NCBI GenBank assembly: GCA_002269645.1
Contig: NIVC01001260.1
Span: forward strand, 1 to 64,000
DNA from: Macrostomum lignano
Lineage: Eukaryota
Direction: 5' to 3'
DNA: 64,000 nt
The notes beneath the pieces are model-generated. The model did not search any database. It had not been told where the DNA came from and saw only the letters and a list, made by a program, of their open reading frames with translations. Position 1 is the stretch's first letter. Each line of letters starts with the position of its first letter. Below are positions 11,901 to 58,639 of the stretch, piece after piece. The translations under genes and the position numbers were made by a program.

Positions 11901-11939
11901 ATCTATCTATATATCTACTTATCTTTCTATTTATCTACT

Positions 11940-11992
<53 letters not shown>

Positions 11993-12087
11993 GTCTATCT
12001 ATCTGTCTATCTATATATCTATATATCTATTTATCTATCTATCTATCTATCTATCTATTTATCTATCTATCTATCTGTCTATCTATA

Positions 12088-12126
<39 letters not shown>

Positions 12127-12155
12127 TTATCTATCTATCTATCTGTCTATCTATA

Positions 12156-12208
<53 letters not shown>

Positions 12209-12323
12209 GTCTATCTATATATCTATATATCTATTTATCTATCTATCTATCTATCTATCTATTTATCTATCTATCTATCTGTCTATCTATATATCTATCT
12301 ATCTATCTATCTGTCTATCTATC

Positions 12324-12379
<56 letters not shown>

Positions 12380-22354: not shown

Positions 22355-26852
<4,498 letters not shown>

Positions 26853-27859: not shown

Positions 27860-30800
27860 CGAGGGCTGGGCAATAAGTTTCCGGATGTGCCCAGACAGAA
27901 ATAGTTAGAGAGAAAAAACACTTACATCTTTTCAAAGTACTCTTCAGCAGATTCGATGCAAATTTTCATGCGCCTAAATCACTTGCTGAAGCAGCTGGAC
28001 CAATCTGAAGCAGGCACCTCCTCCACATGCCGGGTGAAGGCCTCCACTGCAGCTTTGGTGATCCATAGCGGATTCCACGCATCCCGCACTTGATTTGTGG
28101 AAGCACAAAAAAGTCGCAGGGGCCAGGTCGGGGCTGTTGAGTGGATGACCGAGCTCTTGAATGCGCTCTCCGGCCAGGAACTCCGCCACCTGTCGAGCCT
28201 TGTGGGCCGGGGCGTTGCTGTTGATGGAGAAGGATGCCCCGAGCTCGAGTCCTTGGGCGACGCCTGGAGAGAGCGCTCAGCACTTCTGGCAGGCAAATGT
28301 TGGCGTACCAGTCACCGGTGACTGTGCGCTGCTGCACGAGTGGAATCGTGGCCAGATGACCGGTTTTTGCAACAAAAACGGCCACCATCTGCTTCGCCAC
28401 GCTGCGCTCTCGCCGAAGCTTGGATGGTGGGGTGCCACCAAATGGAGTCCACTGGGCCGACTGCTGCTTAGTCGCCGGGTCGAAACTATAGATCCAGGAC
28501 GCGTCACCACTGACGATATCCCAGACCGAGTTTGAGCTGCCTCCGTTGAATCTGTCGAGCATGGTGCGGCACCAGGTCACCCGAGCCTCCTTCTGCTCCG
28601 GAGCCAGCTGATGAGGCACCCAGCGTGCAGAAATCTTGCTCAGGTTGAGCTGTGAATGCAGGATCGTCCTGATGGATCCTGATGAGATGCCCAACTCTGC
28701 CTCTATCTGGGCCACAGTGACTGTGACCTCAACCATGGCCCGGACAGCAGCAACATTATACTTGGTCGTTGCGGAGACAGGCCGGCCGCTGCGCTCCTCA
28801 TCATCCAGACTCTGCCTGCCGCGTCGAAATTCGGCAAACCAGTCAAAAACGGTCGATCTAGAAGGTGCTTCATCCCCAAAAGCTCCTCGCAATTGCTCAA
28901 GACTTTCTTGCTGCCGCAGATAATAAATCATTGTGATGGGTTTTGACCTTTCGGCCCCCTTGTGGGGAAGCCTTCGGGCCTCAGGTCTCAGAAATAAATC
29001 AATTAGAGTCCTGGCCCCCCACTCCTGTCAGATGGTCAGCCCCATGGTAGCTTGATCGTGTGGCGAGCAGTCTAGGTCCTATAGCTAAGAGAGGGACAGC
29101 GAGAGACAAGCAGGGAGAATTTTGAAGGTAGAAATTAGTTAATCCGCAGATTAACTAACTCGCTGCCACCAGCCCGTGCGCCCTGGCTCACCACACCGGG
29201 ACTCTCGAAATCGGGCTTCCGACTAGAAGGGGCTTTGCACTTACCTGCCAACTAGTGTCTTTTTGCTGTCAATCTCGAAGTCATAGCCGATGTTAAGGGA
29301 CACTGCTGGGACTAGATCGCATTGGCCATGCAGGTACAGAGGGGACTTGTGCAGGGGATTCTTGCAGTGGTGAGACTATGGGGTAGCTACATGTACCATG
29401 GTACTATTACATTGCTAAATACGAAGAATTGTACTTTTGGCCTTCAACGCGCCAACTAGCCTCTCCTAGCGCGCGCTAATGATAGGCTAACTCGAACATC
29501 AGAGACCGCATGATTCATCACCCGAGCCGCTTGGCTAACCTAGAGTGCACAGAGTACACCTCTGGAGCCGATTCTGCACTATTGGCAATTTCGCTAACTG
29601 ATTTGATAGATTGATCGACTGAGAACTGCCTTGCCATTGGTCCACTGTGACCGGCGCCTACTAGCTTAGCTATTCATCTGAGCCATCGGCGAACAAAGAA
29701 ATAAAACCGATAAAAATAACTGTCAGATTTAACCTTCACCTTAGATCACTTCACACCTCAGATTGAATTGGAGTTTCAGACTACTAGCAGTATTATTGAA
29801 TGACTTCTGCCTCGATTACAGCACTACTGAACAAAGTGAGAAAAAGTGTGCGCCTAATCCAGCTACTGAAACAGGGGACAGATAAGGAATCACCCAATCA
29901 AGCAAGTCTAGGCAGCCTCTCACCCAACCAATCAGAAACTCAACAGCCGGAGACCAGGTAATCCACAGTGACCGAATCGGCTTAGTGCTTCGCAGCTGTA
30001 GGCCCGGGATGATGCTGATGTCACAATCTTCGCTGATAGCTAGCAGGTGATGCTCTTCACTTTGATGTTCACTGCTGATGACCGGGGGGATTCGTCCTTG
30101 ATGATGATGGGGGGGGAGTCGCAATCCGGGGATCAAGAAACGACGGTCGATTCCTGGCCAGTGGAGCCGGCACCCGGTCGCAAGAAGGTTTGCAGGGGTA
30201 GCACCCAGAAAGGTGGGGGGTAGCACCCGGAAAGGTGCCGTCCGAGCGGGCCAAAAACACCGGTTAAATAGCCGCCAACTGGACCGCAGTTTGTTATAAT
30301 GGAACACGTCGATTCTAATTGGCTGAGCCGATTTGTTAAAATGAGCGTCGAATTTTCTGATTGGCTAAGCTCGTTGCTACCCAGAATCACGTGACCGGGA
30401 GATCCTATCAGTTCCCTCGGGGTCGTAAAAAAATGACAGGTGCGGCCATAAATCAATCGAAATCGCAACAAAATGATTTATGACTTTTGGCGTAGAATTG
30501 ACAAAAATTAATGAAAAAAATATACATTAGAAAGCTCTTATTAAATAGAAAGTGAAGATAATGAGGAGAAATCGCTAATCGCTAATCCCAAAGTACTTTT
30601 AGGGGTAAAACGCATAGCTGTCAAAACTTTCACACGCTTGAGTGAACACGAACAATAGGCCCTGACCTCATAAATCTTGATGACCTGTCAAAATGATGAG
30701 AAAAAAGCTATCATTCGCATCCCCTCAGACCATCTGGCGCCCGCCTCAACACTGAGTGAGGCGCAGGTGGCTGTCAGACCAGCTTCAAAAGCGATTATTT

Positions 30801-31286: not shown

Positions 31287-33240
31287 AACCACCGCCTGCC
31301 ACAGCCGAGCCCTCTGACGGTCGGCCAGTGCTTTGGACTGGAGGACGGCTCGGATCGAACGGAAGGCCACACAGACAAGTCCTCTGCGCCGCCGGAGGTC
31401 TTCCTCCACGTGGGACACCAGACCGCCGTAGGTGAACCACTGGCAGCGTGGGGGCGGGGTCGTCTATACGTTTGCGCCGCGGCACGTCAGGTCCGCTGGG
31501 ATGTTGGCCGGCACAGTCAGCACCTCGGTCTTCAGTGTGTTGACAACCAGACCGACGCTCGATGCCACCTCGACCAGCCTGTCGATCTGGCGCTGGGCGC
31601 CTTCAAAGGACGAGGACAGGAGGGCGAGGTCGTCGGCGTAGCCAAGCACGCTTAGGCGCTTTTCTCCGTGGCGGCAACCGATGCGTCTGCGCAGCAGAAA
31701 GCCGTCGTTAGCCAAGGGGAGTGCGGTCCGAAGCACCCAGTCCAGCAGCAGCACAAAGAGGAACGGTGCTAGCGTGTCGCCCTGCAGAACTCCTAATGAA
31801 GTATCGAACAGGTCAGACAGGCCGTCCGCCGTTACCACAGCAGCTCGAGTATCGCAATACAGGGTCGATTAGCTGCTGCGGGACCCGGTAGGCTCGAAGG
31901 TCGAAGGGAAGCGACGCTCTGAACACCGAGTCAAACGCCTTTCGAAAGTCAACGAAGACAATGATCAGCGTAGACTGGCGGATGCGCGCCTCCTCGATGA
32001 CACGGTGGAGTGCGAGGATCTGTGTCACTGTGCCGCGTTGCGGCCGGAATCCGTTCTGCTCGTACCGCAGGTACGGGTCCAGCACCGACTGCAGGCGATC
32101 GAGCAGCAGCCGGTTGAAGAGCTTCGCCGTACAGGACATCAGCGAGATCCGCGGTGGTCTTCTTTCCGCGTTGTCCCTGCCTTCTTCGGGATCAGCACGA
32201 TGTGTGCGACGGTCCACTCGGTGGGCGCAGGAGCGCCGGCGAGCACGCGGTTCATGACGCCTGTGACCTGGGAGGCCACACAGCGGAGCCGCAGGGCCTC
32301 GACCGGGACTTCGTCGGGGCCGAGCGCCTTGCCGCCTGGTGATTTCCTAGCGAACGGTACAATATCCTCCGTGGTGACTGGGCTGATGCAGAAGTCCTCC
32401 TCAGCTGGGAGCGGCATGTCCAGTGGGAGCGAAAAACTGGCGGGCAGCGGCGACGCGAGCGCGTTCACGATGCCGGCGAAGAAGTCGCGCAATTCATTCA
32501 TGCGCTCCTCTGATCCTCTGGGGTGTCACCGGCCAGGTTCAGCCCCACGCGCTTTTTGCGCTCCGTCAGAGTGCGTCAGATGGCCGTCCACACTGCGCGG
32601 CTCTTCACGTCTGGGCCGGCTGCAGTGATGGACCGGACAGTGTCGTCGACAGCGGCCTGCTGTCTAGAAGGCGCTCAAACGCGTCTTTAGCGTCGCCCGT
32701 GGGCCGCCGGTTCCTGCGGAGTCACTCGATGTTGAGTCGCGCTTGCCTGATGGTCGGATCGCTCTGCTAGACAGGCAGCAATTTCTGCGCTGGCCGCATC
32801 AGCGAGACCGTCTGCTCTACAGCGGCTCTAACGGCGGTGCTGATGTCGGAATACTTCGCCTCGCGCTGGGCTTCAAGCGCACCGACGAAGGCGCCCGCGA
32901 ATTGACGCTTCACGCGGGCGTTTAACAAGGGTGCCGTGACAGCTGCTTTGGCGGTCGATAAATCCGGTCGTGGAGCCGCAAGTCGCAGAGCAGGAGTTGG
33001 TGGTCTGACCGGAGAGCCAGTAGAGCCATGGTGTCGCAGTTGGTGATGCGGCGGCGCTCGCGAGTGCGAAACAGCGCATGATCGAGTTGCGCCAGTCTCC
33101 TCATGGACACTAGGTCCAGCCGGTCAAGCAGGTTCTCCAGCGCATCGGTGTTGGCGTTCTCGCGTCCCACGACAAAGGGCGAGCGCTTGGATCTCCGCGG
33201 AACTGCGTTCAGGTCTCCGAGCACTGCCAGCGTGTCGCGA
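31287..33240 (-). mobile_element. Degenerate RTE-like LINE fragment (end of APE + RT), truncated at both ends, multiple frameshifts
   Basis: Fragments LGDLNA (APE), WTVAHIVLIPKK, ISLMSCTAKLFNRLL, EQNGFRPQRG, FVDFRKAFDSV, GVLQGDTLAPFLF, GYADDLALL. Confidence 0.92.
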
Positions 33241-33800: not shown

Positions 33801-34036
33801 TGGACAGGCAAATGCCCACACAGCAGCTACAGCAGATTTCAAACGCGGTAGTAGCAATCATAACTAAGTTTGTAACTCGGTGGTACGAGCTGCAGTTTTC
33901 GATTTCTATTATGAAGGTAGTACAGATTTCCCTCTGTGTATAAATATGCCGGAATTTTCAAAGAACATTAAAGGGCATTTTTTGCTCCTTTTTGCGTTTC
34001 AATATCATTTTTTGAGTTGAACTGTTTGCGGTCGCT

Positions 34037-34260
34037 ATGGTTGATCAGTATTCATCCGGTGATGACTGCTGCGATGACTGCTGCAGGTGTTGGCTCTTCC
34101 GGTAAGAGGTTACGGGGACAATTTTTGTCTACATGTAGATCAGCAATTTATCTTTTTGCTTGATTTTTTCAGGTTCCTGTGCTTCATATTCTGCTGCAAG
34201 TGCCTCTGCCCAGATGAGAGCCCGAGGTATCGAAGGCAAAGAGATTCTGATTGGGCTTAA
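34037..34260 (+). CDS. Cysteine-rich micropeptide A, 50 aa, two exons (34037-34101, 34173-34260)
   Basis: Spliced product MVDQYSSGDDCCDDCCRCWLFRFLCFIFCCKCLCPDESPRYRRQRDSDWA. 71-nt phase-2 intron GTAAGA...TTTTTTCAG; TATAAA at ~33939; paralogous to B and C. Confidence 0.75.
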
Positions 34261-34364
34261 TCCATCATCAACTGAAAAACGAACTTCTGAGATTCTAATA
34301 TAGAACCAATCTAAACTAATGACTCCGTAATGCTTATTAGGTTATCTAACATGATCATTTGAAG

Positions 34365-34610
34365 TATTTATCAGGATTAGTTCAATTGTCTAACATTGAT
34401 TAGTTCAGTTATCTAATAGGATTAAGTCAAGTAGTATCGAACAGGATTAGTTCGAGTATTTAACAGGATTAGTTCGAGTATCTAACAGGATTAGTTCGAG
34501 TATTTAACAGGATTAGTTCGAGTATCTAACAGGAATAGTTCGAGTATCTAACAGGAATAGTTCGAGTATCTAACAGGAATAGTTCGAGTATCTAACAGGA
34601 TTATTTCAAC
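34365..34610. repeat. Minisatellite, 22-bp unit
   Basis: Unit AACAGGATTAGTTCGAGTATCT. Confidence 0.9.
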
Positions 34611-35164
34611 TGTTTAATCCTTATATTTCAAGACTAGTCAAGCCAGTTTAGTTGTGAGAATAAAATTCTTTATTTTTCTTCACGTTTCTAAAAATAGTCA
34701 TGAGGTGTGGATTTGCCAAGACTGTACTACCCCGTTAACGCGCTTGTGTGCGTACAAATATTGTGCACTATACTTTTTTCTCATTCTATTTTTAAACTGT
34801 ATCGGTCACTGTGCAATTTTCAATTTACTTTTTTAGCTTTTCTAATTGAACGATAATAAAATGAATTTTGAAAGAGTGATGATCATTATAGCATCAAGTC
34901 GCTTTACACTAATGGTGGATGTCGATTTGGAAAAACACGAAATTAACAATTAGTACATATCATTGTGTACTGAACCGCATTGTTAGTGGTAGTACCTACT
35001 GACGAAATTTCCTGATATAGCCATGGGGAAGTACCTGCTTTCAAATACATCAGCCATTACGACATAAAACAATTATCCTCAGCATTGGAGCCCTTGGCCT
35101 GGGCACAGGATTATGGTCGCATGCTTATTTGTACACAAACTTGCATGCAATATTATGTTGTAGC

Positions 35165-35838
35165 ATCGGTAGACAAACCGGCAGGCAAACATCAGGCGGT
35201 CAAACGTCGTTTAGCAAATGTCGGTGGGTTAAACATCGTGAGACAATGTTGGTGGAACACGTTGGTAGACAAATATCGGAAGACAAATGTCGGTGGACAA
35301 ATGTCGACGGAACATGTTGGTAGACAAATGTCGGAAGACAAAAATCGGTGGACAAATGTCGGTGGACAAATGTCGGTGGACAAATGTCGATGGACAAATG
35401 TCGGTGGACAAATGTCGGTGGACAAATGTCGGTGGAACACGTTGGTAGACAAAAGTTGAAAGACAAATGTCGGTGGACAAATGTCGGTGGACAAAAATCG
35501 GTGGACAAATGTCGGTGGACAAATATCGGTGGACAAATGTCGGTGGACAAATATCGGTAGACAAACGTCGGTAGACAAATATCGGCAGACAAATTTCGGT
35601 GGATAAATATCGGTAGACAAATGTCGGTAGACAAATATCGGTAGACAAATGTCGGTAAATAAATGTCGGCACACAAAAGTCGGTACACGAATCTCGGTAG
35701 ACAAATGTCAGTATACAAATGTCAGTATACAAATGTCAGTAGACAAATTTCGGTAGACAAATGTCGGTGAACAAATGTCGGTAGGCAAATCTCGGTAGAC
35801 AAACTCGGTAGACAAATTTCGGTAGACAAATGTCGGTG
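35165..35838. repeat. Minisatellite, 14-bp unit
   Basis: Unit GACAAATGTCGGTG/A. Confidence 0.93.
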
Positions 35839-36073
35839 GGTTTGTGTTTTGAGGCGCTAAGAAATTCACAGTTCACATGAAAACGCACAAGAAAGTGTGG
35901 TAATGACGTCAAAATCAATTTTATCACCGGGTTCTACCTAGTAGTCTATTGCAGTCTACTGCATTTAACTGTAAAGGTTCAAGTGATCAGATTTACTAGT
36001 TACTATTCGGTTGAAATCTTCGGATTTGTTCTGCCAGCATACACGCGAGCTACGATCCTGCTGCTTCACAAAT

Positions 36074-36377
36074 ATGATGGATCAAACCGCTACGAACAAC
36101 GAAAATAAAAGGCACTGGTTCATCGAGTAAGTTTTCAACAATATCGCAAAGTATGAAGTCAAGTCCCGTAATATTTATTGATTACCCAACTACCTAATCG
36201 CCCTACTAACTAGATTAGCAATCCACTATTTACTCATCCCAGATAGAAAACTTGTTTATCTAATTATCTGATAACTATCCATGGTTTTTCAAATTTTGCA
36301 GCTGGCTCTGCAAAATCTTCTGTTGCGAATGCTTCTGCAAAAAACCTGATGAAGATAATAAGAATCGAAAGGCATGA
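36074..36377 (+). CDS. Cysteine-rich micropeptide B, 42 aa, two exons (36074-36126, 36302-36377)
   Basis: Spliced product MMDQTATNNENKRHWFIDWLCKIFCCECFCKKPDEDNKNRKA. 175-nt phase-2 intron GTAAGT...TTTTGCAG at the same aligned position as in A and C. Confidence 0.7.
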
Positions 36378-36827
36378 AATTCTGAACTGTAATACCGATT
36401 ACTGCTGCAATATTCTCAATATTTATCTACTACAGCTCCATTAGGATTCTCTCGTACTCCCGATTCTATTTTTAGCTCATTGGGGAATCCCAATGTATAG
36501 CTTATATACGTATGTACTCTATGATGATTACTCTAACAATAAAGCTATTATTCGAGACTATGCTCATTTGTTGATTATGATTAAAAGCGGAAAATGGAAA
36601 AAAATACGAAGAAGGAGTGGTACCAAGCAAACAGGCTCTAGGTACTACCTTTATGGAGGATTTCTCAAAATGGATCACCAGGTACTGATGTCATACAGTA
36701 GTACCTACTACAGTAACGCTATATATGTATACTTACGGGGCATATTGAGACACTCAACCGATCAAGTTGAGCAAACTTGCAAGTAGACTCTCAATTGGAA
36801 TCGTACGAAATCACCCGGAATCAAAGC

Positions 36828-37062
36828 ATGCCCAATCAGCAAGCAAACGACGGCTGCTGCGAACAGTACGAGTGCTGCAGGTGGTGCCTCTGCAGGTAAA
36901 CAAGCGCTTAATTTGAAATTGTTTTTAAATATCTGCAACTAAAACTAAGCTATCGAGTCACTCATATATAAATATTCAATTAAATATTGACTTTTCAGAT
37001 TCTTCTGTTACATCTTCAAGTGCAAGTGCTGCAGAGAACAATCTGGAACGCAGCACGTTTGA
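36828..37062 (+). CDS. Cysteine-rich micropeptide C, 43 aa, two exons (36828-36895, 36999-37062)
   Basis: Spliced product MPNQQANDGCCEQYECCRWCLCRFFCYIFKCKCCREQSGTQHV. 103-nt phase-2 intron GTAAAC...CTTTTCAG; AATAAA at ~37144 and ~37183. Confidence 0.75.
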
Positions 37063-37210
37063 AGAAAAGTTATTTCAACTGAAGTCATTAACACTATACT
37101 ATATATGTAAATCGGACTCCCGAGACTAAAGTAAAGTAACCAAATAAACAGTAGCTGCGATAATCTCGATATATTTGAAATCAATAAAATATGTGTTCGC
37201 GATTTTTTTC

Positions 37211-39830
37211 GGTAGATAACTGACTTCTATGGTAGATAACTGACTTCTATGGTAGACAACTGACTTCTATGGTAGCTAACTGACTTCTATGGTAGGTAAC
37301 TGACTTCTATGGTAGATAACTGACTTCTATGGTAGATAACTGACTTTGATGGTAGACAACAGTCTTCTATGGTAGACAACTGACTTCTATGGGGTAGGTA
37401 ACTGACTTCTATGGTAGCTAACTGACTTCTATGGGTAGCTAACTGACTTCTATGGTAGATAACTGGCTTTGATGGTAGACAACAGTCTTCTATGGTAGAC
37501 AACTGACTTCTATGGGGTAGATAACTGACTTCTATGGTAGATAACTGACTTCTATGGTAGATAACTGACTTCTATGGTAGATAACTGACTTCTATGGGGT
37601 AGATAACTGACTTCTATGGTAGATAACTGACTTCTATGGTAGATAACTGACTTCTATGGGGTAGATAACTGACTTCTATGGTAGATAACTGACTTCTATG
37701 GTAGATAACTGACTTCTATGGTAGACAACTGACTTCTATGGTAGATAACTGACTTCTATGGTAGATAACTGACTTCTATGGTAGATAACTGACTTCTATG
37801 GTAGATAACTGACTTCTATGGGGTAGGTAACTGACTTCTATGGTAGATAACTGACTTCTATGGTAGATAACTGACTTCTATGGTAGACAACTGACTTCTA
37901 TGGTAGACAACTGACTTCTATGGTAGACAACTGACTTCTATGGTAGATAACTGACTTCTATGGTAGATAACTGACTTCTATGGTAGACAACTGACTTCTA
38001 TGGTAGATAACTGACTTCTATGGTAGACAACTGACTTCTATGGGGTAGGTAACTGACTTCTATGGTAGATAACTGACTTCTATGGTAGATAACTGACTTC
38101 TATGGTAGATAACTGACTTCTATGGTAGATAACTGACTTCTATGGGTAGCTAACTGACTTCTATGGTAGATAACTGGCTTTGATGGTAGACAACAGTCTT
38201 CTATGGTAGACAACTGACTTCTATGGGGTAGGTAACTGACTTCTATGGTAGACAACTGACTTCTATGGTAGACAACAGTCTTCTATGGTAGACAACTGAC
38301 TTCTATGGGGTAGGTAACTGACTTCTATGGTAGATAACTGACTTCTATGGTAGACAACTGACTTCTATGGGGTAGATAACTGACTTCTATGGTAGATAAC
38401 TGACTTCTATGGTAGACAACAGTCTTCTATGGTAGACAACTGACTTCTATGGGGTAGGTAACTGACTTCTATGGTAGACAACTGACTTCTATGGTAGACA
38501 ACAGTCTTCTATGGTAGACAACTGACTTCTATGGGGTAGGTAACTGACTTCTATGGTAGACAACTGACTTCTATGGTAGACAACTGACTTCTATGGGGTA
38601 GGTAACTGACTTCTATGGTAGACAACTGACTTCTATGGTAGACAACTGACTTCTATGGGGTAGATAACTGACTTCTATGGTAGATAACTGACTTCTATGG
38701 TAGATAACTGACTTCTATGGTAGATAACTGACTTCTATGGGTAGCTAACTGACTTCTATGGTAGATAACTGGCTTTGAAGGTAGACAACAGTCTTCTATG
38801 GTAGACAACTGACTTCTATGGGGTAGGTAACTGACTTCTATGGTAGACAACTGACTTCTATGGTAGACAACAGTCTTCTATGGTAGACAACTGACTTCTA
38901 TGGGGTAGGTAACTGACTTCTATGGTAGACAACTGACTTCTATGGTAGACAACTGACTTCTATGGGGTAGGTAACTGACTTCTATGGTAGACAACTGACT
39001 TCTATGGTAGACAACTGACTTCTATGGGGTAGGTAACTGACTTCTATGGTAGATAACTGACTTCTATGGTAGATAACTGACTTCTATGGTAGATAACTGA
39101 CTTCTATGGTAGATAACTGACTTCTATGGTAGATAACTGACTTCTATGGTAGATAACTGACTTCTATGGTAGATAACTGACTTCTATGGTAGACAACTGA
39201 CTTCTATGGTAGATAACTGACTTCTATGGTAGATAACTGACTTCTATGGTAGATAACTGACTTCTATGGTAGATAACTGACTTCTATGGGGTAGGTAACT
39301 GACTTCTATGGTAGATAACTGACTTCTATGGTAGATAACTGACTTCTATGGTAGACAACTGACTTCTATGGTAGACAACTGACTTCTATGGTAGATAACT
39401 GACTTCTATGGTAGATAACTGACTTCTATGGTAGACAACTGACTTCTATGGTAGATAACTGACTTCTATGGTAGACAACTGACTTCTATGGGGTAGGTAA
39501 CTGACTTCTATGGTAGATAACTGACTTCTATGGTAGATAACTGACTTCTATGGTAGATAACTGACTTCTATGGTAGATAACTGACTTCTATGGGTAGCTA
39601 ACTGACTTCTATGGTAGATAACTGGCTTTGATGGTAGACAACAGTCTTCTATGGTAGACAACTGACTTCTATGGGGTAGGTAACTGACTTCTATGGTAGA
39701 CAACTGACTTCTATGGTAGATAACTGACTTCTATGGTAGATAACTGACTTCTATGGTAGATAACTGACTTCTATGGTAGATGACTGATTTATATGGTAGA
39801 TAATTTACTTTATTGGCAGATAATGACTTC
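37211..39830. repeat. Minisatellite, 20-bp unit, ~130 copies
   Basis: Unit GGTAGATAACTGACTTCTAT with recurrent variants (GGGGTAGGTAAC, AGACAACAGTC). Confidence 0.98.
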
Positions 39831-40473
39831 AATGTTAAACAATCATATGATAGATTTTAAAAAGAAGATGCTGGAATAACGTTTGCAAAAATTTCTACAA
39901 GAGTTTGCACCCGGAATTCCCAAAGCCTAATACTATCTGCTCTAGCCCGCTGCACCCCAAGTGCATATTGTGCACCCGTGGGCAGTGTAAACTCCAACAG
40001 GATTGTGCAGCCAACTGTACTTGCAGACAGCGGCTGCATTTTTGTTTCTGTCTAAAAATAGCGCTTACCAGTGCTGGCATGAGGTAGTGCCTGCTAAAAT
40101 TTGACAACCAACAAGCTATTCAATTTCTAAGTGTAGCTTTACTGTACTTTTTACTTACTAACCCAATACGTAAAGTTTTAATTTGCAGAAATAAAAAATT
40201 GATATACTGTTCCTGGATAAAAATTTAGATAGAAAAGTTAACTGTCTGTACTAGTATTGAATAAACAAATAATCCGCGGTAAATTGTTAAAATTAAAAAC
40301 GAAGTTCTAAGCAATCATTTAAATCAATATTTTTCTAAACTGTTTAGTCATGAAACTCTAGTTGCTCATTATTTCGCCTCTTCATCGCTTAGCGACCGCA
40401 ACCGCAACAGAAGATGTAACGCAGGCACCTGGAAGCAAAATTTTCGAGTGCACTCACAGTCTTGAGTGTACAG

Positions 40474-41436
<963 letters not shown>

Positions 41437-41926: not shown

Positions 41927-43490
41927 AAGAGCCAGGTAGGCCATAGAAGAGACAGGTAGGCCATAGAAGAGACAGGTAGGCCATAGAAGAGCCAGGTAGG
42001 CCATAGAAGAGACAGGTAGGCCATAGAAGAGACAGGTAGGCCATAGAAGAGACAGGTAGGCCATAGAAGAGACAGGTAGGCCATAGAAGAGCCAGGTAGG
42101 CCATAGAAGAGACAGGTAGGCCATAGAAGAGCCAGGTAGGCCATAGAAGAGACAGGTAGGCCATAGAAGAGACAGGTAGGCCATAGAAGAGCCAGGTAGG
42201 CCATAGAAGAGACAGGTAGGCCATAGAAGAGCCAGGTAGGCCATAGAAGAGACAGGTAGGCCATAGAAGATACAGGTAGGCCATAGAAGAGACAGGTAGG
42301 CCATAGAAGAGACAGGTAGGCCATAGAAGAGACAGGTAGGCCATAGAAGAGACAGGTAGGCCATAGAAGAGACAGGTAGGCCATAGAAGAGACAGGTAGG
42401 CCATAGATGAGACAGGTAGGCCATAGAAGAGACAGGTAGGCCATAGAAGAGACAGGTAGGCCATAGAAGAGCCAGGTAGGCCATAGAAGACACAGGTAGG
42501 CCATAGAAGAGACAGGTAGGCCATAGAAGAGACAGTTGGCAATAGAAGAGACAGGTAGGCCATAGAAGAGACAGGTAGGCCATAGAAGAGACTGGTAGGC
42601 CATAAAAGAGACAGGTAGGCCATAGAAGAGACAGGTAGGCCATAGAAGAGACAGGTAGGCCATAGAAGAGACAGGTAGGCCATAGAAGAGCCAGGTAGGC
42701 CATAGAAGAGACAGGTAGCCCATAGAAGAGACAGGTAGGCCATAGAAGAGACAGGTAGCCCATAGAAGAGACAGTTGGCAATAGAAGAGCCAGGTAGGCC
42801 ATAGAAGAGACAGGTAGGCCATAGAAGAGACTGGTAGGCCATAGAAGAGACAGGTAGGCCATAGAAGAGCCAGGTAGGCCATGGAAGAGCCAGTTGGGCA
42901 ATAGAAGAGACAGGTAGCCCATAGAAGAGACAGGTAGGCCATAGAAGAGCCAGGTAGGCCATAGAAGAGCCAGTTGGGCAATAGAAGAGACAGGTAGCCC
43001 ATAGAAGAGACAGGTAGGCCATAGAAGAGACAGTTGGGCAATAGAAGAGACAGGTAGCCCATAGAAGAGACAGGTAGGCCATAGAAGAGACAGGTAGGCC
43101 ATAGAAGAGACAGGTAGGCCATAGAAGAGACAGGTAGGCCATAGAAGAGCCAGGTAGGCCATAGAAGACACAGGTAGGCCATAGAAGAGACAAGGTAGGC
43201 CATAGAAGAGACAGGTAGGCAATAGAAGAGCCAGGTAGGCCATAGAAGATACAGTTGGCAATAGAAGAGCCAGGTAGGCCATAGAAGAGACAGGTAGCCC
43301 ATAGAAGAGACAGGTAGGCCATAGAAGAGACAGGTAGCCCATAGAAGAGACAGGTAGCCCATAGAAGAGACAGGTAGGCCATAGAAGAGCCAGGTAGGCC
43401 ATGGAAGAGCCAGTTGGGCAATAGAAGAGACAGGTAGTCAGGTAGGTTACAAAAGAGCCAGGTAAGTTATAGAAGAGCCAGATAGGCCAA
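41927..43490. repeat. Minisatellite, 20-bp unit, ~75 copies
   Basis: Unit AGAGACAGGTAGGCCATAGA; the long LWPTCLFYG ORFs are artefacts of it. Confidence 0.98.
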
Positions 43491-43911: not shown

Positions 43912-45041
43912 CTAGGAAACGAGTAGTTCAAACTCCCTCATGGTGTAGTAATAGCCGAATGGCAAATACCAGTTAATACCAGAAGCAAAAGACGCTGTGC
44001 TCAGAGCCGAGGGCGGTGTGAAGTACAGGCCGTTTGGGTTGGTTTAGTGACAATTTGCGTACCACCAACCTCCTTTGTAGAGCATACTGCAACTCTGTTG
44101 AGACCTAAGGTCGTTGTCTGAATCGTATTCGTTGCACCAGGCCATGCAGTCTCTCAGACTCGGGTGGCTGCCATGTAAACCGGAGACACTCAAACGGAAC
44201 TTGTCGGTCTCGCTGGCCACGGAGAAGCTGGAGTAGTCGGCCCAGAACTCCGTGCCATTCCACAGCCTCATTCGCATGCGAAGTGCTCGACCAGACGGCC
44301 AGGTCAGAGAGTGCACAGCTCGCAGACCTGCAGTTGTCAAGCACAGCTCAATGCTGAGCAGCTCACAGCCACAGGAGGCCAGCGCTATCAAAAAGTGCAT
44401 CAATACCGTCATGACCGCACTGCACTGCACTCACCGAGCCAGTGGTTCGTGTGGGCTCCCTCTCCGAAGCCGGCTGCGTACTCGGTCCAGTTGCGATAGA
44501 AGTCTGTCGAGTTGTCCGCCCGACGCTGGATGCTGATCCAGCAGTCGCTGAGTGACGTCACAAACACCTGCAGTGAGGCATTGAGAGCTGCGGTCAGGCA
44601 AGTGCTGTCAGTTACCTGGCTGTCAGGTGAGTCAGTGCACGCTTGCTACTCACCCTGATGCAGCACGGAGACTGGTGAGTGTGAGGCGTCAGTCTGCGAC
44701 ACACAGCGCCACTTCGGCTTGCTGGAATGCGAATGAGCTCAGCTGGGTGAGCAGCTTCATCAGGTTTAAGGCATCGAGCATGCAGCCAGGACTCACTCAC
44801 CCACGATGCACTGGGGCTGCTGAGCACCGTCTCGAGGGATGAAGACCAGCAGCTGGTGAGCGAGCAGGTGCTTGGCAGCCTGTGCAGCGCACTGCAGCAC
44901 ATCGCTGGCTTGGTTGATGGAGGAGACGAAGAAGTGGCGGACTCGACCGCCCGACCAGCTGCTGCTGTGCACCTCATTTAGGATGACAGCAGCAGAAGTT
45001 GTTGTCAAGGCAACTGTTAGGAATGCCAGCAGTTGATTCAT
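43912..45041 (-). pseudogene. Secreted fibrinogen-related (FReD) gene copy 1; premature TAA at 44046-44044, probable pseudogene or truncated paralog
   Basis: Exons (minus): 45041-44801, 44742-44654, 44567-44435, 44327-43912. Signal peptide MNQLLAFLTVALTTTSA; WISIQRR...FYRNWTEYAAGFG...WLG; GGWWYANCH*TNPNGLY..., with the homologous frame continuing to a TAG at 43914-43912. It also lacks about five codons of the NGAMFST motif. Confidence 0.85.
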
Positions 45042-45870: not shown

Positions 45871-47021
45871 ATGCATAAAGCACTGCTCCATCTCATTCTT
45901 CTGCACGCGATTAGTGTTTCAGGGCAGATTTCGCTGCCCGAAGTGCACAGCAGCAGCTGGTCGGGCGGTCGAGTCCGCCACTTCTTCGTCTCCTCCATCA
46001 ACCAAGCCAGCGATGTGCTGCAGTGCGCTGCACAGGCTGCCAAGCACCTGCTCGCTCACCAGCTGCTGGTCTTCATCCCTCGAGACGGTGCTCAGCAGCC
46101 CCAGTGCATCGTGGGTGAGTGAGTCCTGGCTGCATGCTCGATGCCTTAAACCTGATGAAGCTGCTCACCCAGCTGAGCTCATTCGCATTCCAGCAAACCG
46201 AAGTGGCGCTGTGTGTCGCAGACTGACGCCTCACACTCACCAGTCTCCGTGCTGCATCAGGGTGAGTAGCAAGCGTGCACTGACTCACCTGACAGCCAGG
46301 TAACTGACAGCACTTGCCTGACCGCAGCTCTCAATGCCTCACTGCAGGTGTTTGTGACGTCACTCAGCGACTGCTGGATCAGCATCCAGCGTCGGGTGGA
46401 CAACTCGACAGACTTCTATCGCAACTGGACCGAGTACGCAGCCGGCTTCGGAGAGGGAGCTCACACGAACCACTGGCTCGGTGAGTGCAGTGCAGTGCGG
46501 TCATGACGGTATTGATGCACTTTTTGATAGCGCTGGCCTCCTGTGGCTGTGAGCTGCTCAGCATTGAGCTGTGCTTGACAACTGCAGGTCTGCGAGCTGT
46601 GCACTCTCTGACCTGGCCGTCTGGTCGAGCACTTCGCATGCGAATGAGGCTGTGGAATGGCACGGAGTTCTGGGCCGACTACTCCAGCTTCTCCGTGGCC
46701 AGCGAGACCGACAAGTTCCGTTTGAATGTCTCCGGTTTCCATGGCAGCCATCCCGCGATGTACGACAGCCTCGCTTCGCACAATGGAGCCATGTTCAGCA
46801 CCTTAGATTCTGACAACGATGGTAGTTCAGGTCACTGCAGCACCTACTACAAAGGAGGCTGGTGGTTTTCAAGCTGCTACATGTGCAGTCCTAATGGTTT
46901 GTACTACAACCCACCTGAGGCGCTGGAAACCGCCATTAACAATGGAATCGTTTGGAAATTTCCATTCGGTGCTGGCTACTCGATGCAGGAGTTCGAGATT
47001 CTTGTGTCCGCTAAAGCCTAA
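45871..47021 (+). CDS. Secreted fibrinogen-related (FReD; ficolin/angiopoietin-like domain) protein, copy 2, 299 aa, 4 exons
   Basis: Exons 45871-46114, 46173-46261, 46348-46480, 46588-47021, all phase-compatible (900 nt). Signal peptide MHKALLHLILLHAISVSG; IQRRVDNSTDFYRNWTEYAAGFG, HWLG, HNGAMFSTLDSDND, GGWWFSSC, NGLY. Confidence 0.9.
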
Positions 47022-54253: not shown

Positions 54254-55487
54254 ATGGCTCCAATTGTTGTCACCCTGCCAGATGGCAGCAGCGATGCGAG
54301 GATTGCTGCTCAGACGGCTTCCATTGCCGAACTGAAAGTCTGGGCAGCCAGCCGTTGCGGCCTGTCTCCACTGCAGTTGGGCGTCTTTGCCGCTTCTGGT
54401 GCCGCGCTTGACGATGCCGACTCTTTGGTCGGTCTGGACTGTGCTGAACTGCAGGTTTGTCAGCTGAGCTTGTATTCGATTCACTATTTATAGATTTAGG
54501 AATTCCATGCAGGCTCATCTGAAAGATCAAAAATTTATCACGAGCACGAATTCACAACTGAAAGGTCGGGGGGATTCCCTACAGACCCACAACTGATGGA
54601 TCCAGGGGATTTCCCACAGACCCACATCTGTAGGATCGGAGGGGATTCCCCACAGACCCACATCTGTAGGATCAGAGGGGATTCCCCACAGACCCACAAC
54701 TGTAGGATCAGAGGGGATTCCCCACAGACCCACATCTGTAGGATCGGAGGGGATTCCCCACAGACCCACATCTGTAGGATCAGAGGGGATTCCCCACAGA
54801 CCCACAACTATAGGATCAGATGGGATTCCCCACAGACCTACAACTGTAGGATCGGAGGGGATTCCCCACAGACCCACAACTGTAGGATCGGAGGGGATTC
54901 CCCACAGACCCACAACTGTAGGATCGGAGGGGATTCCCCACAGACCCACAACTGTAGAATCGGAGGGGATTCCCCACAGACCCAACTACTGTAGGATCAG
55001 AGGGGATTCCTTACAGACCCAAAAATGAAGAATTGGCGGATTCCCACAGACCCACAACTGAAGGGGGGAATTCCTACAGACCCACAACTGAAAGATAAGG
55101 GGATTCCCCACAGACCCACAACTGAAAGATAAGGGGATTCCCCAGAGACGCACAACTGATGGCTCAGGGTTCCTATTGCATCTCAGTCCGGTCTACCGCG
55201 TAGTATATCAGGAAACAAAATTCTCACCAATACACGAATGCGGACTAATCTCACACATGCATCGCTAATCTCCCTGCCAGGTGCAGGCCCTGCTGCCCGG
55301 CGGCAAAGTGCACGGTTCGCTGGCTCGCGCCGGCAAAGTGCGCGGCCAGACGCCTAAAGTGGCCAAACAGGAGAAGAAGAAAAACAAAACCGGCCGGGCT
55401 AAGCGGCGAATCCAGTATAACAAACGGTTTGTTGCCACCGTCAACCTGCCTGGCGGTCGTCGCCGCGGTCCCAATGCCAACTCTTAA
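54254..55487 (+). CDS. FAU: Ubiquitin-like FUBI / 40S ribosomal protein S30 (eS30) fusion, 135 aa, two exons (54254-54454, 55281-55487)
   Basis: GG|[40 protein letters not shown] is the eS30 signature. Divergent Ub-like N-terminus; phase-0 GT-AG intron. Confidence 0.95.
54560..55160. repeat. Minisatellite, 36-bp unit (FAU intron)
   Basis: Unit TGTAGGATCGGAGGGGATTCCCCACAGACCCACAAC. Confidence 0.95.
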
Positions 55488-55719
55488 TTCTTAGAAATCA
55501 TGTTCAAGACTGATTTATTGCTTATTCAGCAAGTCAGCAATGTGAAACTATTAAACGAACTGATTAAAATTTTGTGACTCCAGTCTTTGGCAGTCTTTGG
55601 AGCGGCTTGGATTGAAAAAAAACAACGCGTGTCTGTGTTTGTGTCTTTGCCCTTTTGAATTTTTAGCAACAACTAGTAGTTAAGTAAGTGTCGAGGGTAT
55701 ATTTTCCTAATTAGGCGTA

Positions 55720-56710
55720 TCCTATTTATCATAATCAGGAAATTAGGTATTTTTCCAAATTAGGTATGTTTCCTAATCAGGTATGTTTTCTAACTAGGTA
55801 TGGTTCCAAATTAGTTATGGTTCCAAATTATGTATGGTTCCAAATTAGGTATGGTTCCAAATTATGTATGGTTCCAAATTAGGTATGGTTCCAAATTAGG
55901 TATGGTTCCTAATCAGGTTTGTTTCTAATTAGGTATGGTTCCAAATTAGGTATGGTTCCAAATTAGGTATGGTTCCAAATTAGGTATGGTTCCAAATTAG
56001 GTATGGTTCCAAATTAGGTATGGTTCCAAATTAGGTATGGTTCCAAATTAGGTATGGTTCCAAATTAGTTATGGTTCCAAATTAGGTGGGTTTCCAAATT
56101 AGGTATGGTTCCAAATTAGGTATGGTTCCAAATTAGGTGGGTTTCCAAATTAGGTATGGTTCCAAATTAGGTATGGTTCCAAATTAGGTGGGTTTCCAAA
56201 TTAGGTATGGTTCCTAATTAGGTATGGTTCCAAATTAGGTATGGTTCCTAATCAGGTTTGTTTCTAATTAGACATGGTTCTAAATTAGGTATGTTTCCTA
56301 ATCAGGTATGTTTTCTAACTAGATATGGTTCCAAATTAGGTATAGTTCCAAATTAGGTATAGTTCCAAATTAGTTATGGTTCCAAATTAGGTATGGTTCC
56401 AAATTAGGTATGGTTCCAAATTAGGTATTTTTCTAATTAGATATGGTTCCAAATTAGGTATTTTTCTAATTAGATATGGTTCCAAATTAGGTATTTTTCT
56501 AATTAGATATGGTTCCAAATTAGATATTTTTCTAATTAGATATGGTTCCAAATTAGGTATTTTTCTAATTAGATATGGTTCCAAATTAGATATTTTTCTA
56601 ATTAGATATGGTTCCAAATTAGGTATGTTTCCTAATTAGGTATGTTTCCTAATTTGGTGTGTTTCCTTATTTGGTATGTTTCCTAATTAGGTACTTTTCC
56701 AAATTAGGCA
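55720..56710. repeat. Minisatellite, 17-bp unit, with a 33-bp dimeric sub-array at ~56390-56620
   Basis: Unit TATGGTTCCAAATTAGG. Confidence 0.95.
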
Positions 56711-57264
56711 TATTTTGTTAATTAGGGTAATCTTTCGTTAGAAAAAGTGGTTATCCGCATGATAAAAAAATCCTGTTTTGTTTTTATAATTCTTTTAAAA
56801 TATTGTGTAAGTCATGTTTACGTATCAATAAAATTCCAATAAAACAGGTAAGAATTGTGTGATATGTTTTAGATGCATAAATCGACATCATTTAGTACAG
56901 ACAGACTGTTGGTGAAGCAATTCTCGGTAAGTACTTGATGTACTTTTCAGATTTTATTCGTCTTAATAGAGGCAGATTCTTTAATAATTACTGAGCTTGA
57001 ATGATCGCGCACAAAAATGATGAGAAACTTTCCCTCACAATGAAATTTAATTGACTGCTAGTGGTCATTATTCATTGATTATAAACTAATTTGTCTCTGA
57101 ATTGTGCGCGGCATTGAGATGGCTGAATCAGTTTGTGTTTCATTTATTTTCATCCTTTTTTATTGCCAATCTCACTTTCTGTCTATTTTGTTTACCATGC
57201 GGATAACCAATATATTATTTTAATTTTTAGCTGATAACTGAAGTCTCCATTTGCAGCAGTAGCG

Positions 57265-57800
57265 GCCATAGACAATAATGCCTTGCCTTTTCTAGTAGTA
57301 TAATGTTTCGTTAATAGTTTCTTAGACATCCATAGTCTATGGTCAGGCCATAGACAATAATGCCTTCCCTAGTAGTATAATGTTTCGTTAATAGTTTCTT
57401 AGACATCCATAGTCTATGGTCAGGCCATAGACAATAATGCCTTCCCTAGTAGTATAATGTTTCGTTAATAGTTTCTTAGACATCCATAGTCTATGGTCAG
57501 GCCATAGACAATAATGCCTTCCCTAGTAGTATAATGTTTCGTTAATAGTTTCTTAGACATCCATAGTCTATGGTCAGGCCATAGACAATAATGCCTTCCC
57601 TAGTAGTATGTTTCGTTAATAGTTTCTTAGACATCCATAGTCTATGGTCAGGCCATAGACAATAATGCCTTCCCTAGTAGTATGTTTCGTTAATAGTTTC
57701 TTAGACATCCATAGTCTATGGTCAGGTCATAGACAATAATGCCTTCCCTAGTAGTATAATGTTTCGTTAATAGTTTCTTAGACATCCATAGTCTATGGTC
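57265..57800. repeat. Minisatellite, 77-bp unit, ~7 copies, ending ~77 bp upstream of the PSMA4 ATG
   Basis: CCATAGACAATAATGCCTTCCCTAGTAGTATAATGTTTCG... recurs at 57348, 57425 and 57502. Each unit contains the palindrome CCATAG-T-CTATGG. Confidence 0.95.
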
Positions 57801-57877
57801 AAAAATAAAAACTATGCATGCTGAATCGGTTACGAGCGAAGAAGACACAAAAATATTATTAATAATAAACGACAACA

Positions 57878-58639
57878 ATGGCACGCCGGTACGATACTCG
57901 CACTACAACATTCTCGCCAGAGGGCCGCCTGTACCAGGTAGAATACGCCATGGAAGCTGTAGGACACGCTGGCACCTGTATGGGCATACTGGCTCGCGAT
58001 GGAATCGTACTGGCTGCTGAGAGGCGCAATATTAACAAACTGTTAGACGAGCCGGCCTTCTCTGAGAAAATCTACATTATTAATGACGATCTGTGCGTAG
58101 CAGTGGGCGGCATCACAGCCGATGCTAATGTGCTCATCGATGAGATGCGTTTAAGCGCTCAACGCTACCTGCTGCAGTACCAGGAGCCAATGCCTGTTGA
58201 GCAGCTGGTGTCCTCTATCTGCGATATCAAGCACGCCTACACAATGTTTGGCGGCAGGCGACCATTCGGTGTCAGCATGCTGTACTCTGGCTGGGATCTG
58301 AACTACGGCTTCCAGCTCTATCAGAGCGATCCCAGCGGCAACTTCAGCGGCTGGAAGGCCACCTGTATTGGCAGCAATGCAGCCGCTGCCAACAGCATGC
58401 TGGACCAGGAGTACACAGAAAATATGAGCATTGATGAGGCGCTCAGCCTCACTATTAAAGTGTTGAACAAATCCATGACAATGAGCAAGTTATCTGCCGA
58501 CAAGGTGGAGGTGGCCGTGTTCACTCGGAAAGAGGGTCACACCTATCTGAGCCTGCTGCCTCAGTCTAAAGTTGAGAAGCTCATCAAGGATCTGGAGGAG
58601 GCCGAACTAGCCAAGAAGGAGGCGGAGAAGAAAACCTAA
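57878..58639 (+). CDS. PSMA4: Proteasome subunit alpha type-4 (alpha3), 253 aa, intronless CDS
   Basis: [27 protein letters not shown]...[16 protein letters not shown]...[35 protein letters not shown]. Confidence 0.97.

What the first reader, a model, noticed from the sequence alone, without database searches (positions are those of the whole stretch)
34037..37062. Hidden tandem family of three intron-split, cysteine-rich micropeptide genes (42-50 aa)
Seen in sequence: three co-oriented two-exon ORFs, each with a canonical phase-2 intron at the same aligned position, directly before a shared core [FW][LF]CxIF[CK]C[KE]C. A = MVDQYSSGDDCCDDCCRCWLF|R FLCFIFCCKCLCPDE... (10 Cys). C = ...NDGCCEQYECCRWCLC|R FFCYIFKCKCCREQ... 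(10 Cys). B = ...KRHWFI|D WLCKIFCCECFCKKP... (5 Cys). The introns and UTRs are not similar while the peptide pattern is, which argues for selection on the protein. All three fall below the 60-aa ORF cutoff and are split, so standard annotation would miss them. Inference: with no signal peptide and an aromatic/Cys hydrophobic core flanked by charged tails, they resemble CYSTM-type palmitoylated membrane peptides, or could be metal-binding or disulfide-crosslinked structural (e.g. sperm or cuticle) peptides. I do not recognise a named family.
Basis: partly seen in the sequence, partly recalled or inferred. Interest (0 to 1): 0.78.

Follow-up and report, generated by a model that had tools for sequence, protein, structure and literature searches.

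The report
Three tandem cysteine-rich micropeptide genes
A 3-kb stretch of the flatworm Macrostomum lignano genome carries three small two-exon genes for 42-50-residue cysteine- and aromatic-rich peptides that match no known protein family; they look like real genes, but their expression and function are untested.

Summary
The window is Macrostomum lignano contig NIVC01001260.1. On the + strand lie three two-exon ORFs:
- A: 34037-34101 + 34173-34260, 50 aa, 10 Cys.
- B: 36074-36126 + 36302-36377, 42 aa, 5 Cys.
- C: 36828-36895 + 36999-37062, 43 aa, 10 Cys.

Each has a GT..AG phase-2 intron in the codon just before the shared core [FW][LF]CxIF[CK]C[KE]C.

The core motif occurs 3 times in the window and 0 times in 200 shuffles. 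Exons are similar while flanks are not. Synonymous differences exceed non-synonymous ones for A-C and A-B. GC3 matches local genes, and the introns are AT-rich. I think these are most likely real paralogous coding genes (about 0.8).

No relative was found in Pfam, PDB sequences, 5.8 billion proteins (word-indexed search) or 1.84 billion cluster representatives.

CYSTM membership fails on four counts: no HMM hit, hhalign probability 0.19%, no run of 3-4 cysteines, and the Cys-rich segment is not at the C-terminus. A true transmembrane helix is not supported.

Best functional guess, inferred only: cytosolic peptides held on membranes by multiple S-acylation, analogous to the palmitoylated CYSTM/CYSPD domain. 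A metal-thiolate role is the main rival.

I could reach neither transcript data nor the copy of the cluster on the duplicated contig.

The parts
34037..34101 (+). Gene A exon 1 (ATG to donor; encodes MVDQYSSGDDCCDDCCRCWLF plus 2 nt of an Arg codon). Contains a perfect 12-nt tandem duplication GATGACTGCTGC x2 (DDCC-DDCC) at 34058-34081.
34102..34172 (+). Gene A intron: 71 nt, GTAAGA...TTTTTTCAG, phase 2, GC 0.34.
34173..34260 (+). Gene A exon 2 coding part (R)FLCFIFCCKCLCPDESPRYRRQRDSDWA plus TAA stop.
33939..33944 (+). TATAAA 98 nt upstream of the gene A ATG (candidate TATA box).
   Evidence: consensus match only
34659..34664 (+). First AATAAA downstream of gene A. It implies a 3'UTR of roughly 400 nt that contains the 22-bp minisatellite at 34343-34607.
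36074..36126 (+). Gene B exon 1 (MMDQTATNNENKRHWFI plus 2 nt of an Asp codon).
36127..36301 (+). Gene B intron: 175 nt, GTAAGT...TTTTGCAG, phase 2, GC 0.33.
36302..36377 (+). Gene B exon 2 coding part (D)WLCKIFCCECFCKKPDEDNKNRKA plus TGA stop.
36538..36543 (+). AATAAA about 160 nt downstream of the gene B stop codon.
36720..36725 (+). TATATA 108 nt upstream of the gene C ATG (candidate TATA box).
   Evidence: consensus match only
36828..36895 (+). Gene C exon 1 (MPNQQANDGCCEQYECCRWCLC plus 2 nt of an Arg codon).
36896..36998 (+). Gene C intron: 103 nt, GTAAAC...CTTTTCAG, phase 2, GC 0.25.
36999..37062 (+). Gene C exon 2 coding part (R)FFCYIFKCKCCREQSGTQHV plus TGA stop.
37143..37188 (+). Two AATAAA signals (37143-37148 and 37183-37188), 81 and 121 nt downstream of the gene C stop codon.

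Best explanation
These are three old tandem paralogues of a lineage-restricted micropeptide gene family in Macrostomum lignano. Each gene is its own small transcription unit with two coding exons and one phase-2 intron. Each encodes a 42-50-residue peptide with no signal peptide, so it would be made in the cytosol. The layout is a polar or acidic N-terminus starting MxDQ or MxNQ (A and C also carry two CC pairs), then an invariant Arg, then a Cys/aromatic core [FW][LF]CxIF[CK]C[KE]CxC, then a charged tail.

The most likely mechanism is inferred, not shown. The cysteine cluster would be multiply S-acylated by DHHC palmitoyltransferases. Together with the Phe/Trp/Ile residues, this would pin the peptide to the cytosolic face of a membrane and leave the charged ends free. 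That is how the CYSTM/CYSPD C-terminal cysteine domain works in yeast, but here there is no homology to it.

Shown: the gene structure, the paralogy, the signatures of coding constraint, and the lack of any known relative. Inferred: transcription, translation, S-acylation and membrane localisation.
For: Gene reality:
- The ATG-to-stop ORF stays intact across a canonical GT..AG intron in all three copies, with the same phase and the same alignment column.
- The exons keep nucleotide similarity (z up to 8.1) while most flanks do not.
- pS exceeds pN for A-C (p = 0.012) and A-B (p < 1e-4).
- Exon GC3 is 0.55-0.72 (0.57 without Cys codons), against 0.62 in 868 codons of neighbouring genes. Introns and flanks are GC 0.25-0.37.
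- The N-terminus (MxDQ/MxNQ) begins exactly at the proposed ATG, and the upstream sequence is unrelated.
- TATA-like elements lie at -98 (A) and -108 (C), and AATAAA lies 81-398 nt downstream of each stop codon.

Mechanism:
- There is no N-terminal hydrophobic region, so the peptides are cytosolic and the thiols reduced.
- The core has 5-7 Cys mixed with aromatic and basic residues. This is too short and too charged to be a transmembrane helix: the longest run free of charged and strongly polar residues (D, E, K, R, H, N, Q) is 8, 6 and 4 residues, and the 19-residue hydropathy mean is 1.62, 0.93 and 0.61.
- Yeast CYSTM proteins were shown experimentally to bind membranes through palmitoylation of just such a Cys-rich segment, not through a transmembrane helix (PMC10840359).
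- From my own knowledge, not tested here: the palmitoylated juxtamembrane cysteine cluster of synaptotagmin-1 has similar composition.
Against: - No expression evidence of any kind could be obtained. The collections appear to hold no M. lignano transcript assemblies: look-up of the proteasome gene returned only the two genome contigs.
- The cluster's copy on the duplicated contig could not be fetched, so the constraint test rests on about 40 aligned codons per pair. C-B shows no pS > pN.
- Cysteines are almost always TGC (22 of 25) and partly sit in TGCTGC repeats, so some similarity may be at the nucleotide level.
- B has only 5 Cys and carries D, K and E inside the core.
- The AlphaFold2 model has low confidence (pLDDT 54).
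- Nothing links the peptides directly to S-acylation.
Confidence: 0.35

Rival explanations
1. Metal-thiolate peptides, similar in function to metallothioneins or to CDT1/PCR-type proteins. The CC, CxC and CxCxC motifs would bind Cu(I), Zn or Cd, and the tandem array would provide gene dosage, as in many metallothionein clusters.
For: - A and C are 20-23% Cys, with CC-x2/4-CC followed by CxxxxCCxCxC.
- The genes are tiny, tandemly duplicated and have TATA-like promoters.
- From my own memory only: the CCEQYECC in peptide C resembles the CCEQYCC of C. elegans mtl-2.
- CYSTM relatives such as CDT1 confer Cd/Cu tolerance (PMC2804304, PMC10840359).
Against: - Aromatic content is 12-16% F/W/Y, with an invariant Ile-Phe. 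Classical metallothioneins largely lack aromatic residues (established knowledge).
- B has only 12% Cys.
- No Pfam metallothionein family matches at E <= 10.
- There is no MRE core (TGCRCNC) within 600 bp upstream of any of the three genes, although the window averages 0.88 per kb. It is not known whether flatworms use MTF-1/MRE.
Confidence: 0.2
2. Structural peptides cross-linked by disulfides, analogous to keratin-associated or sperm-associated proteins. They would be laid down in an intracellular hardened structure of the worm, such as the stylet or sperm parts.
For: High Cys plus aromatic content, small size, no signal peptide, and a multi-copy tandem family.
Against: There is no tissue information. 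The peptides lack the Gly/Pro/Ser repeats usual in such proteins. No similarity to any such family appeared in Pfam or in the large protein searches.
Confidence: 0.1
3. These are not functional protein genes. The similarity would reflect a duplicated TGC/CTG-rich non-coding segment or lncRNA exons, and the ORFs are fortuitous or decaying.
For: - There are no expression data.
- There is no homologue anywhere.
- The Cys codons lie in TGCTGC repeats, and one is a perfect 12-nt tandem duplication.
- C-B shows no excess of synonymous change.
- Frame-specific codon-usage likelihood does not favour the proposed frame for A and C.
Against: Three copies are diverged to saturation at synonymous sites and in their flanks. 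Yet all three keep the ATG, an open frame across the splice junction, the same intron phase and column, canonical splice sites, a stop codon and a downstream AATAAA. pS exceeds pN significantly in two of three pairs. The contrast in GC content between exons and introns is typical of coding exons here.
Confidence: 0.15
4. The micro-ORFs are parts of larger transcription units. Possible forms are additional upstream coding exons that add, for example, a signal peptide; an SL-trans-spliced polycistron covering B and C; or upstream ORFs of another gene.
For: - B and C lie only 450 nt apart.
- In-frame sequence upstream of the ATGs of B and C is open for 29 and 19 codons.
- AG acceptor-like sites with pyrimidine tracts lie just upstream of the ATGs of A and B.
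- M. lignano is known to use spliced-leader trans-splicing (my own knowledge).
Against: - Peptide similarity begins exactly at the ATG (MxDQ/MxNQ) and the upstream sequence is unrelated.
- Each unit has its own stop codon and AATAAA.
- No long ORF or known domain lies downstream, only minisatellites.
Confidence: 0.1

Closest known systems
CYSTM / CYSPD proteins (Pfam PF12734; human CYSTM1, yeast Cpp1-3, plant PCC1 and CDT1)
   Same: Small, no signal peptide, polar N-terminal part. A segment with 5-6 cysteines among hydrophobic residues is followed closely by acidic residues. In yeast this segment anchors the protein by palmitoylation rather than as a transmembrane helix (PMC10840359), which is the mechanism I propose here.
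   Different: - No sequence or profile similarity.
- No run of 3-4 consecutive cysteines; the maximum is CC.
- The Cys segment is followed by a polar tail of 9-16 residues instead of ending the protein.
- These peptides are 42-50 aa against 60-150 aa.
- There is no Pro/Gln-rich head.
- Conserved charged positions lie inside the core.
Metallothioneins
   Same: Very small size, 20-23% Cys in A and C, CC/CxC/CxCxC motifs, tandem gene copies, and one or two short introns.
   Different: Rich in Phe/Trp/Tyr/Ile. B is Cys-poor. No Pfam metallothionein hit. No MRE-like promoter elements.
Palmitoylated juxtamembrane cysteine clusters (for example synaptotagmin-1 and cysteine-string protein); recalled from my own knowledge, not tested
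   Same: Local composition: cysteines alternating with Phe/Ile/Leu and Lys.
   Different: Those clusters are segments of larger proteins that have their own transmembrane or J domains. Here the cluster is essentially the whole protein.
Hepcidin and other secreted Cys-rich peptides (toxins, defensins)
   Same: Hepcidin has a superficial ...CIFCC.C... string, recalled from memory. Size and Cys density are similar.
   Different: No signal peptide or propeptide. No Pfam hit. A cytosolic peptide would not form the disulfide scaffold that defines those families.

Membership tests
CYSTM/CYSPD (PF12734) | Significant match to the family profile | tested here: not met
   hmmscan against Pfam-A at E <= 10 gave 0 families for all three peptides. 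hhalign of the three-peptide alignment against 21 vertebrate CYSTM1 proteins carrying PF12734 gave probability 0.19% with 1 aligned column.
CYSTM/CYSPD (PF12734) | Patch of 3-4 consecutive cysteines, the hallmark of the family (PMC2804304) | tested here: not met
   The longest run is CC in all three peptides.
CYSTM/CYSPD (PF12734) | Module always at the extreme C-terminus (PMC2804304) | tested here: not met
   The last Cys is followed by 16 (A), 12 (B) and 9 (C) mostly charged or polar residues.
CYSTM/CYSPD (PF12734) | Helical hydrophobic segment of about 20 residues with 5-6 Cys, followed by an acidic residue | tested here: inconclusive
   There are 5-7 Cys, with an acidic residue 2-4 positions after the last Cys. 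But the best 19-residue Kyte-Doolittle mean is 1.62, 0.93 and 0.61 for A, C and B, and conserved R/K/D/E positions lie inside the segment. AlphaFold2 gives two short helices at pLDDT 54.
CYSTM/CYSPD (PF12734) | S-palmitoylation and membrane binding (PMC10840359) | not testable with these tools
   Needs acyl-biotin exchange or click labelling, and localisation experiments.
Metallothionein | High Cys content in CC/CxC/CxxC motifs | tested here: inconclusive
   A is 20%, C is 23% and B only 12% Cys.
Metallothionein | Near absence of aromatic residues (classical criterion; my own knowledge) | tested here: not met
   8 of 50, 6 of 43 and 5 of 42 residues are F/W/Y, and Ile-Phe is invariant.
Metallothionein | Match to any Pfam metallothionein family | tested here: not met
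   No Pfam family at E <= 10.
Secreted Cys-rich peptides (hepcidin, defensins, knottin toxins) | N-terminal signal peptide, with or without a propeptide | tested here: not met
   The N-termini MVDQYSSGDD, MMDQTATNNE and MPNQQANDGC are polar or acidic with no hydrophobic region. An unseen upstream exon cannot be fully excluded.

The most novel reading that the evidence does not exclude
A family restricted to Macrostomum or to flatworms, possibly grown from TGC-rich repeats, of free-standing cytosolic 'cysteine-cluster' micropeptides. They would act at membranes as lipid-anchored or metal/redox-active thiol modules. This would be a functional analogue of CYSTM/CYSPD that arose independently, and the genes are missing from the protein collections I searched (I could not check the community transcriptome annotation).
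Probability: 0.3. Interest if true: 0.6.

Novelty: new variant of a known kind. Interest (0 to 1): 0.45.

Why it matters
If the genes are expressed, this is a clean example of an intron-split micropeptide family that ORF-length cutoffs hide, in a flatworm model that already has transgenesis and RNAi. It would offer a minimal, naturally occurring multi-cysteine module for studying S-acylation-driven membrane anchoring, or thiol-based metal or redox buffering. It would also be a case of a taxonomically restricted gene family that has been kept for a long time. It does not bear on a long-standing open question, and without expression data it remains a prediction.

Tried and rejected
1. CYSTM membership. 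Rejected by Pfam, by hhalign against a CYSTM1 alignment, and by the family's published defining features.

2. Any known family or relative. Nothing was found in any search:
- Pfam at E <= 10;
- profile search of PDB sequences at E <= 10;
- word-indexed search of 5.8 billion proteins with the three-peptide alignment;
- full HMMER profile search of 1.84 billion cluster representatives, 0 hits at E <= 0.001.
Peptide B could only be submitted as its exon 2 part, because the junction codon is not contiguous in the DNA.

3. Fetching the cluster's copy on the duplicated contig NIVC01001998.1. The only indexed genes there are conserved housekeeping genes more than 10 kb away. Look-ups of the nearby ORFs 36493-36786, 46485-47021, 27966-28931 and 37008-37184(-), and of the UniRef fibrinogen-related protein P0001, all returned 'not on record'.

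4. Transcript evidence. None is reachable. The collection returned no M. lignano transcript contig even for the proteasome gene.

5. Extra family members. None in the window or in the two flanking loci: the next-best six-frame hit scores 10 bits at E = 0.22.

6. Shared promoter motif. Shared 6- to 8-mers in the three 250-nt upstream regions do not clearly exceed shuffles, and the GTAC-rich stretches are not shared by B.

7. MRE elements. None upstream.

8. Structure prediction. pLDDT was 54, too low for a fold search, so I ran none.

9. Frame-specific codon-usage likelihood. Uninformative for sequences this short and this Cys-rich.

10. Rfam and tRNA scans of the window. Nothing found.

11. 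Literature. I found no paper on Macrostomum micropeptides or on cytosolic Cys-rich peptides in this species.
Full report
**Source of the window.** An intronless proteasome alpha-subunit gene at 57878-58639 is found, with identical product and identical coordinates, on contig NIVC01001260.1 of assembly GCA_002269645.1. A second copy lies on NIVC01001998.1. Papers that cite this accession concern Macrostomum lignano. The neighbouring fibrinogen-related ORF is 99% identical to a UniRef protein of M. lignano. The window is therefore M. lignano Mlig_3_7 DNA. The two contigs are duplicated copies, 90-97% identical at the nucleotide level where I could compare them, which fits the neopolyploid genome described in PMC10733133.

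**The observation.**
- A: 34037-34101 + 34173-34260, 50 aa, 10 Cys.
- B: 36074-36126 + 36302-36377, 42 aa, 5 Cys.
- C: 36828-36895 + 36999-37062, 43 aa, 10 Cys.

All three have GTAA donors and pyrimidine-rich CAG acceptors. Exon 1 lengths of 65, 53 and 68 nt make each intron phase 2. In the peptide alignment the split codon (R, D, R) is the same column, directly before [FW][LF]CxIF[CK]C[KE]C. Unspliced, each ORF ends at once at the TAA of the donor.

**Is it more than chance?**
All three are on the + strand, within 3 kb, and each lies directly after an acceptor. Neither occurred in 100 block shuffles or 100 third-order Markov simulations. This test is post hoc.
- As a less biased test, phmmer with peptide A alone recovers exon 2 of C and of B at E = 6e-4 and 8e-4 among 5,947 six-frame pieces. 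B recovers A at 7e-3.
- A profile of the three peptides finds only the six exons (24-43 bits). The next hit in about 85 kb of M. lignano DNA scores 10 bits.

**Are these coding genes?**
- Exon nucleotide similarity is well above shuffles: exon 1 A-C z = 8.1, and the 37-nt core z = 3.6-5.6. Five of six 200-nt flank comparisons are at z <= 1.5. Introns give z = 2.4-3.5, which their shared splice signals can explain. The duplications are therefore old.
- All three copies still keep an ATG, an open frame across the junction, the intron column and phase, and a stop codon.
- Nei-Gojobori counts give pS 0.62 against pN 0.31 for A-C, 0.87 against 0.35 for A-B, and 0.61 against 0.48 for C-B. Fisher p values are 0.012, below 1e-4 and 0.6.
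- Third-codon-position GC is 0.62, 0.55 and 0.72, or 0.57 without Cys codons. That equals the 0.62 seen in 868 codons of neighbouring real genes. The introns (0.25-0.34) and flanks (0.34-0.37) are AT-rich.
- Similarity starts at the ATG (MxDQ/MxNQ). TATA-like hexamers lie at -98 (A) and -108 (C). AATAAA follows each stop codon at +398, +160 and +81/+121 nt.
- Caveats: each pair has only about 40 aligned codons. 22 of 25 Cys codons are TGC and partly sit in TGCTGC repeats. Exon 1 of A contains a perfect 12-nt tandem duplication (DDCC-DDCC). I could obtain no transcript evidence at all.

I put the probability that these are real, constrained protein-coding genes at about 0.8.

**Surroundings.**
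- To the left lie degraded reverse-transcriptase fragments (31464-32217, minus strand), a mariner-like remnant (27966-28931) and a young LINE (22444-26303).
- Between and to the right of the genes lie minisatellites: 34343-34607 inside the putative 3'UTR of A, then 35264-35837, 37211-39834, 40470-41436 and 41927-43437.
- Rfam and tRNA scans found nothing.
- No long ORF on either strand overlaps the exons.
- The nearest ordinary genes are an inverted pair of fibrinogen-related genes at about 43.9-47.0 kb. The context gives no clue to function.

**Relatives.** None was found. Pfam at E <= 10 gave nothing, and PDB sequences at E <= 10 gave nothing. The word-indexed search of 5.8 billion proteins, which holds the UniProt M. 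lignano entries, gave nothing. A full HMMER profile search of 1.84 billion cluster representatives gave no hit at E <= 0.001. This absence is weak evidence about other flatworms. Peptides this short are rarely called as genes, and the collections seem to hold no Macrostomum transcript assemblies.

The family is defined as follows (PMC2804304): small tail-anchored proteins with a Pro/Gln-rich head, and a C-terminal helix carrying 5-6 Cys. Three or four of those Cys are consecutive, an acidic residue follows, and the module always sits at the extreme C-terminus. Here:
- there is no HMM hit;
- hhalign against 21 PF12734 proteins gives probability 0.19%;
- no Cys run is longer than CC;
- polar tails of 9-16 residues follow the Cys segment.

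The best 19-residue hydropathy mean is 1.62 (A), 0.93 (C) and 0.61 (B). Conserved charged positions sit in the core, and the longest stretch free of charged and strongly polar residues (D, E, K, R, H, N, Q) is 8, 6 and 4 residues. Membership is rejected and a true transmembrane helix is unlikely. AlphaFold2 gave two short helices at pLDDT 54, too poor for a fold search.

**Mechanism.** The peptides have no signal peptide, so they should stay in the reducing cytosol, where a disulfide scaffold is unlikely. A short segment of cysteines mixed with Phe/Trp/Ile and basic residues is the typical substrate context for DHHC S-acyltransferases. For the yeast CYSTM proteins it was shown experimentally that such a Cys-rich segment binds the membrane through palmitoylation and is not a transmembrane domain (PMC10840359). 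I therefore propose that these are free-standing, multiply S-acylated, membrane-associated micropeptides. They would work like the CYSPD module without being members of that family. My confidence in the whole statement is about 0.35.

The main rival is a metal-thiolate role (0.2). It is favoured by the CC/CxC motifs and the tandem array. It is disfavoured by 12-16% aromatic residues, by the Cys-poor B, by the lack of any Pfam metallothionein hit, and by the absence of MRE cores upstream. Further rivals are a cross-linked structural role (0.1), non-functional ORFs (0.15) and membership in larger transcription units (0.1). These figures are separate judgements and are not scaled to sum to one; the larger-transcript reading partly overlaps the main model.

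**What could not be done.** The copy of the cluster on NIVC01001998.1 would be the best computational test. The only indexed genes on that contig are conserved housekeeping genes more than 10 kb away, and five look-ups of nearer ORFs or proteins found nothing on record. RNA-seq junction support, orthologues in other Macrostomum species, and translation evidence remain the decisive missing data.

**Verdict.** In novelty it is a new, homology-free variant of the known kind 'small cytosolic cysteine-rich peptides'. Interest is moderate (0.45), because function and even expression are still predictions.

Noticed in passing
window 165-1253 (+) and 22444-26303 (-): Two nearly identical copies of the RNase H-bearing C-terminal ORF of a non-LTR retrotransposon. 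The second belongs to an almost complete element with ORF1, endonuclease and reverse-transcriptase ORFs. The copies are closer to each other than the two duplicated contigs are, so the element was probably active after the genome duplication.
   Followed up: partly
window 27966-28931 (-) and 31464-32217 (-): A mariner/Tc1-like transposase remnant, and degraded reverse-transcriptase fragments directly upstream of the micropeptide cluster.
   Followed up: partly
window 43918-44567 (-) and 46348-47006 (+): A head-to-head pair of fibrinogen-related (FReD) genes. The + copy is 99% identical to UniRef M. lignano A0A1I8G6X4. The - copy is a paralogue at about 70% identity.
   Followed up: partly
window 34343-34607, 35264-35837, 37211-39834, 40470-41436, 41927-43437: Dense minisatellite and microsatellite arrays around and between the genes: 22 bp x12, 14 bp x41, 20 bp x129, (ACAG) x242 and 20 bp x76. 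The first lies inside the putative 3'UTR of gene A. ORF translations suggest further arrays at 5221-5722, 11809-12527, 13683-14861 and 54527-54985.
   Followed up: partly
window 54254-64000; loci L003 and L004: The block with FAU/ribosomal S30, intronless proteasome alpha and a D2HGDH-like FAD oxidase is duplicated on contig NIVC01001998.1 at 90-97% nucleotide identity, with differing repeat arrays. The FAD-oxidase gene call is 539 aa on one contig and 410 aa on the other.
   Followed up: partly
window 34058-34081: A perfect 12-nt tandem duplication, GATGACTGCTGC x2, inside exon 1 of gene A, encoding DDCC-DDCC. It hints that the N-terminal CC pairs grew by in-frame microduplication.
   Followed up: no
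window about 35904-35911 and 36686-36693: A CRE-like palindrome TGACGTCA lies 170 nt upstream of the gene B ATG, and a near-match TGATGTCA lies 142 nt upstream of the gene C ATG. No equivalent was found upstream of gene A.
   Followed up: no
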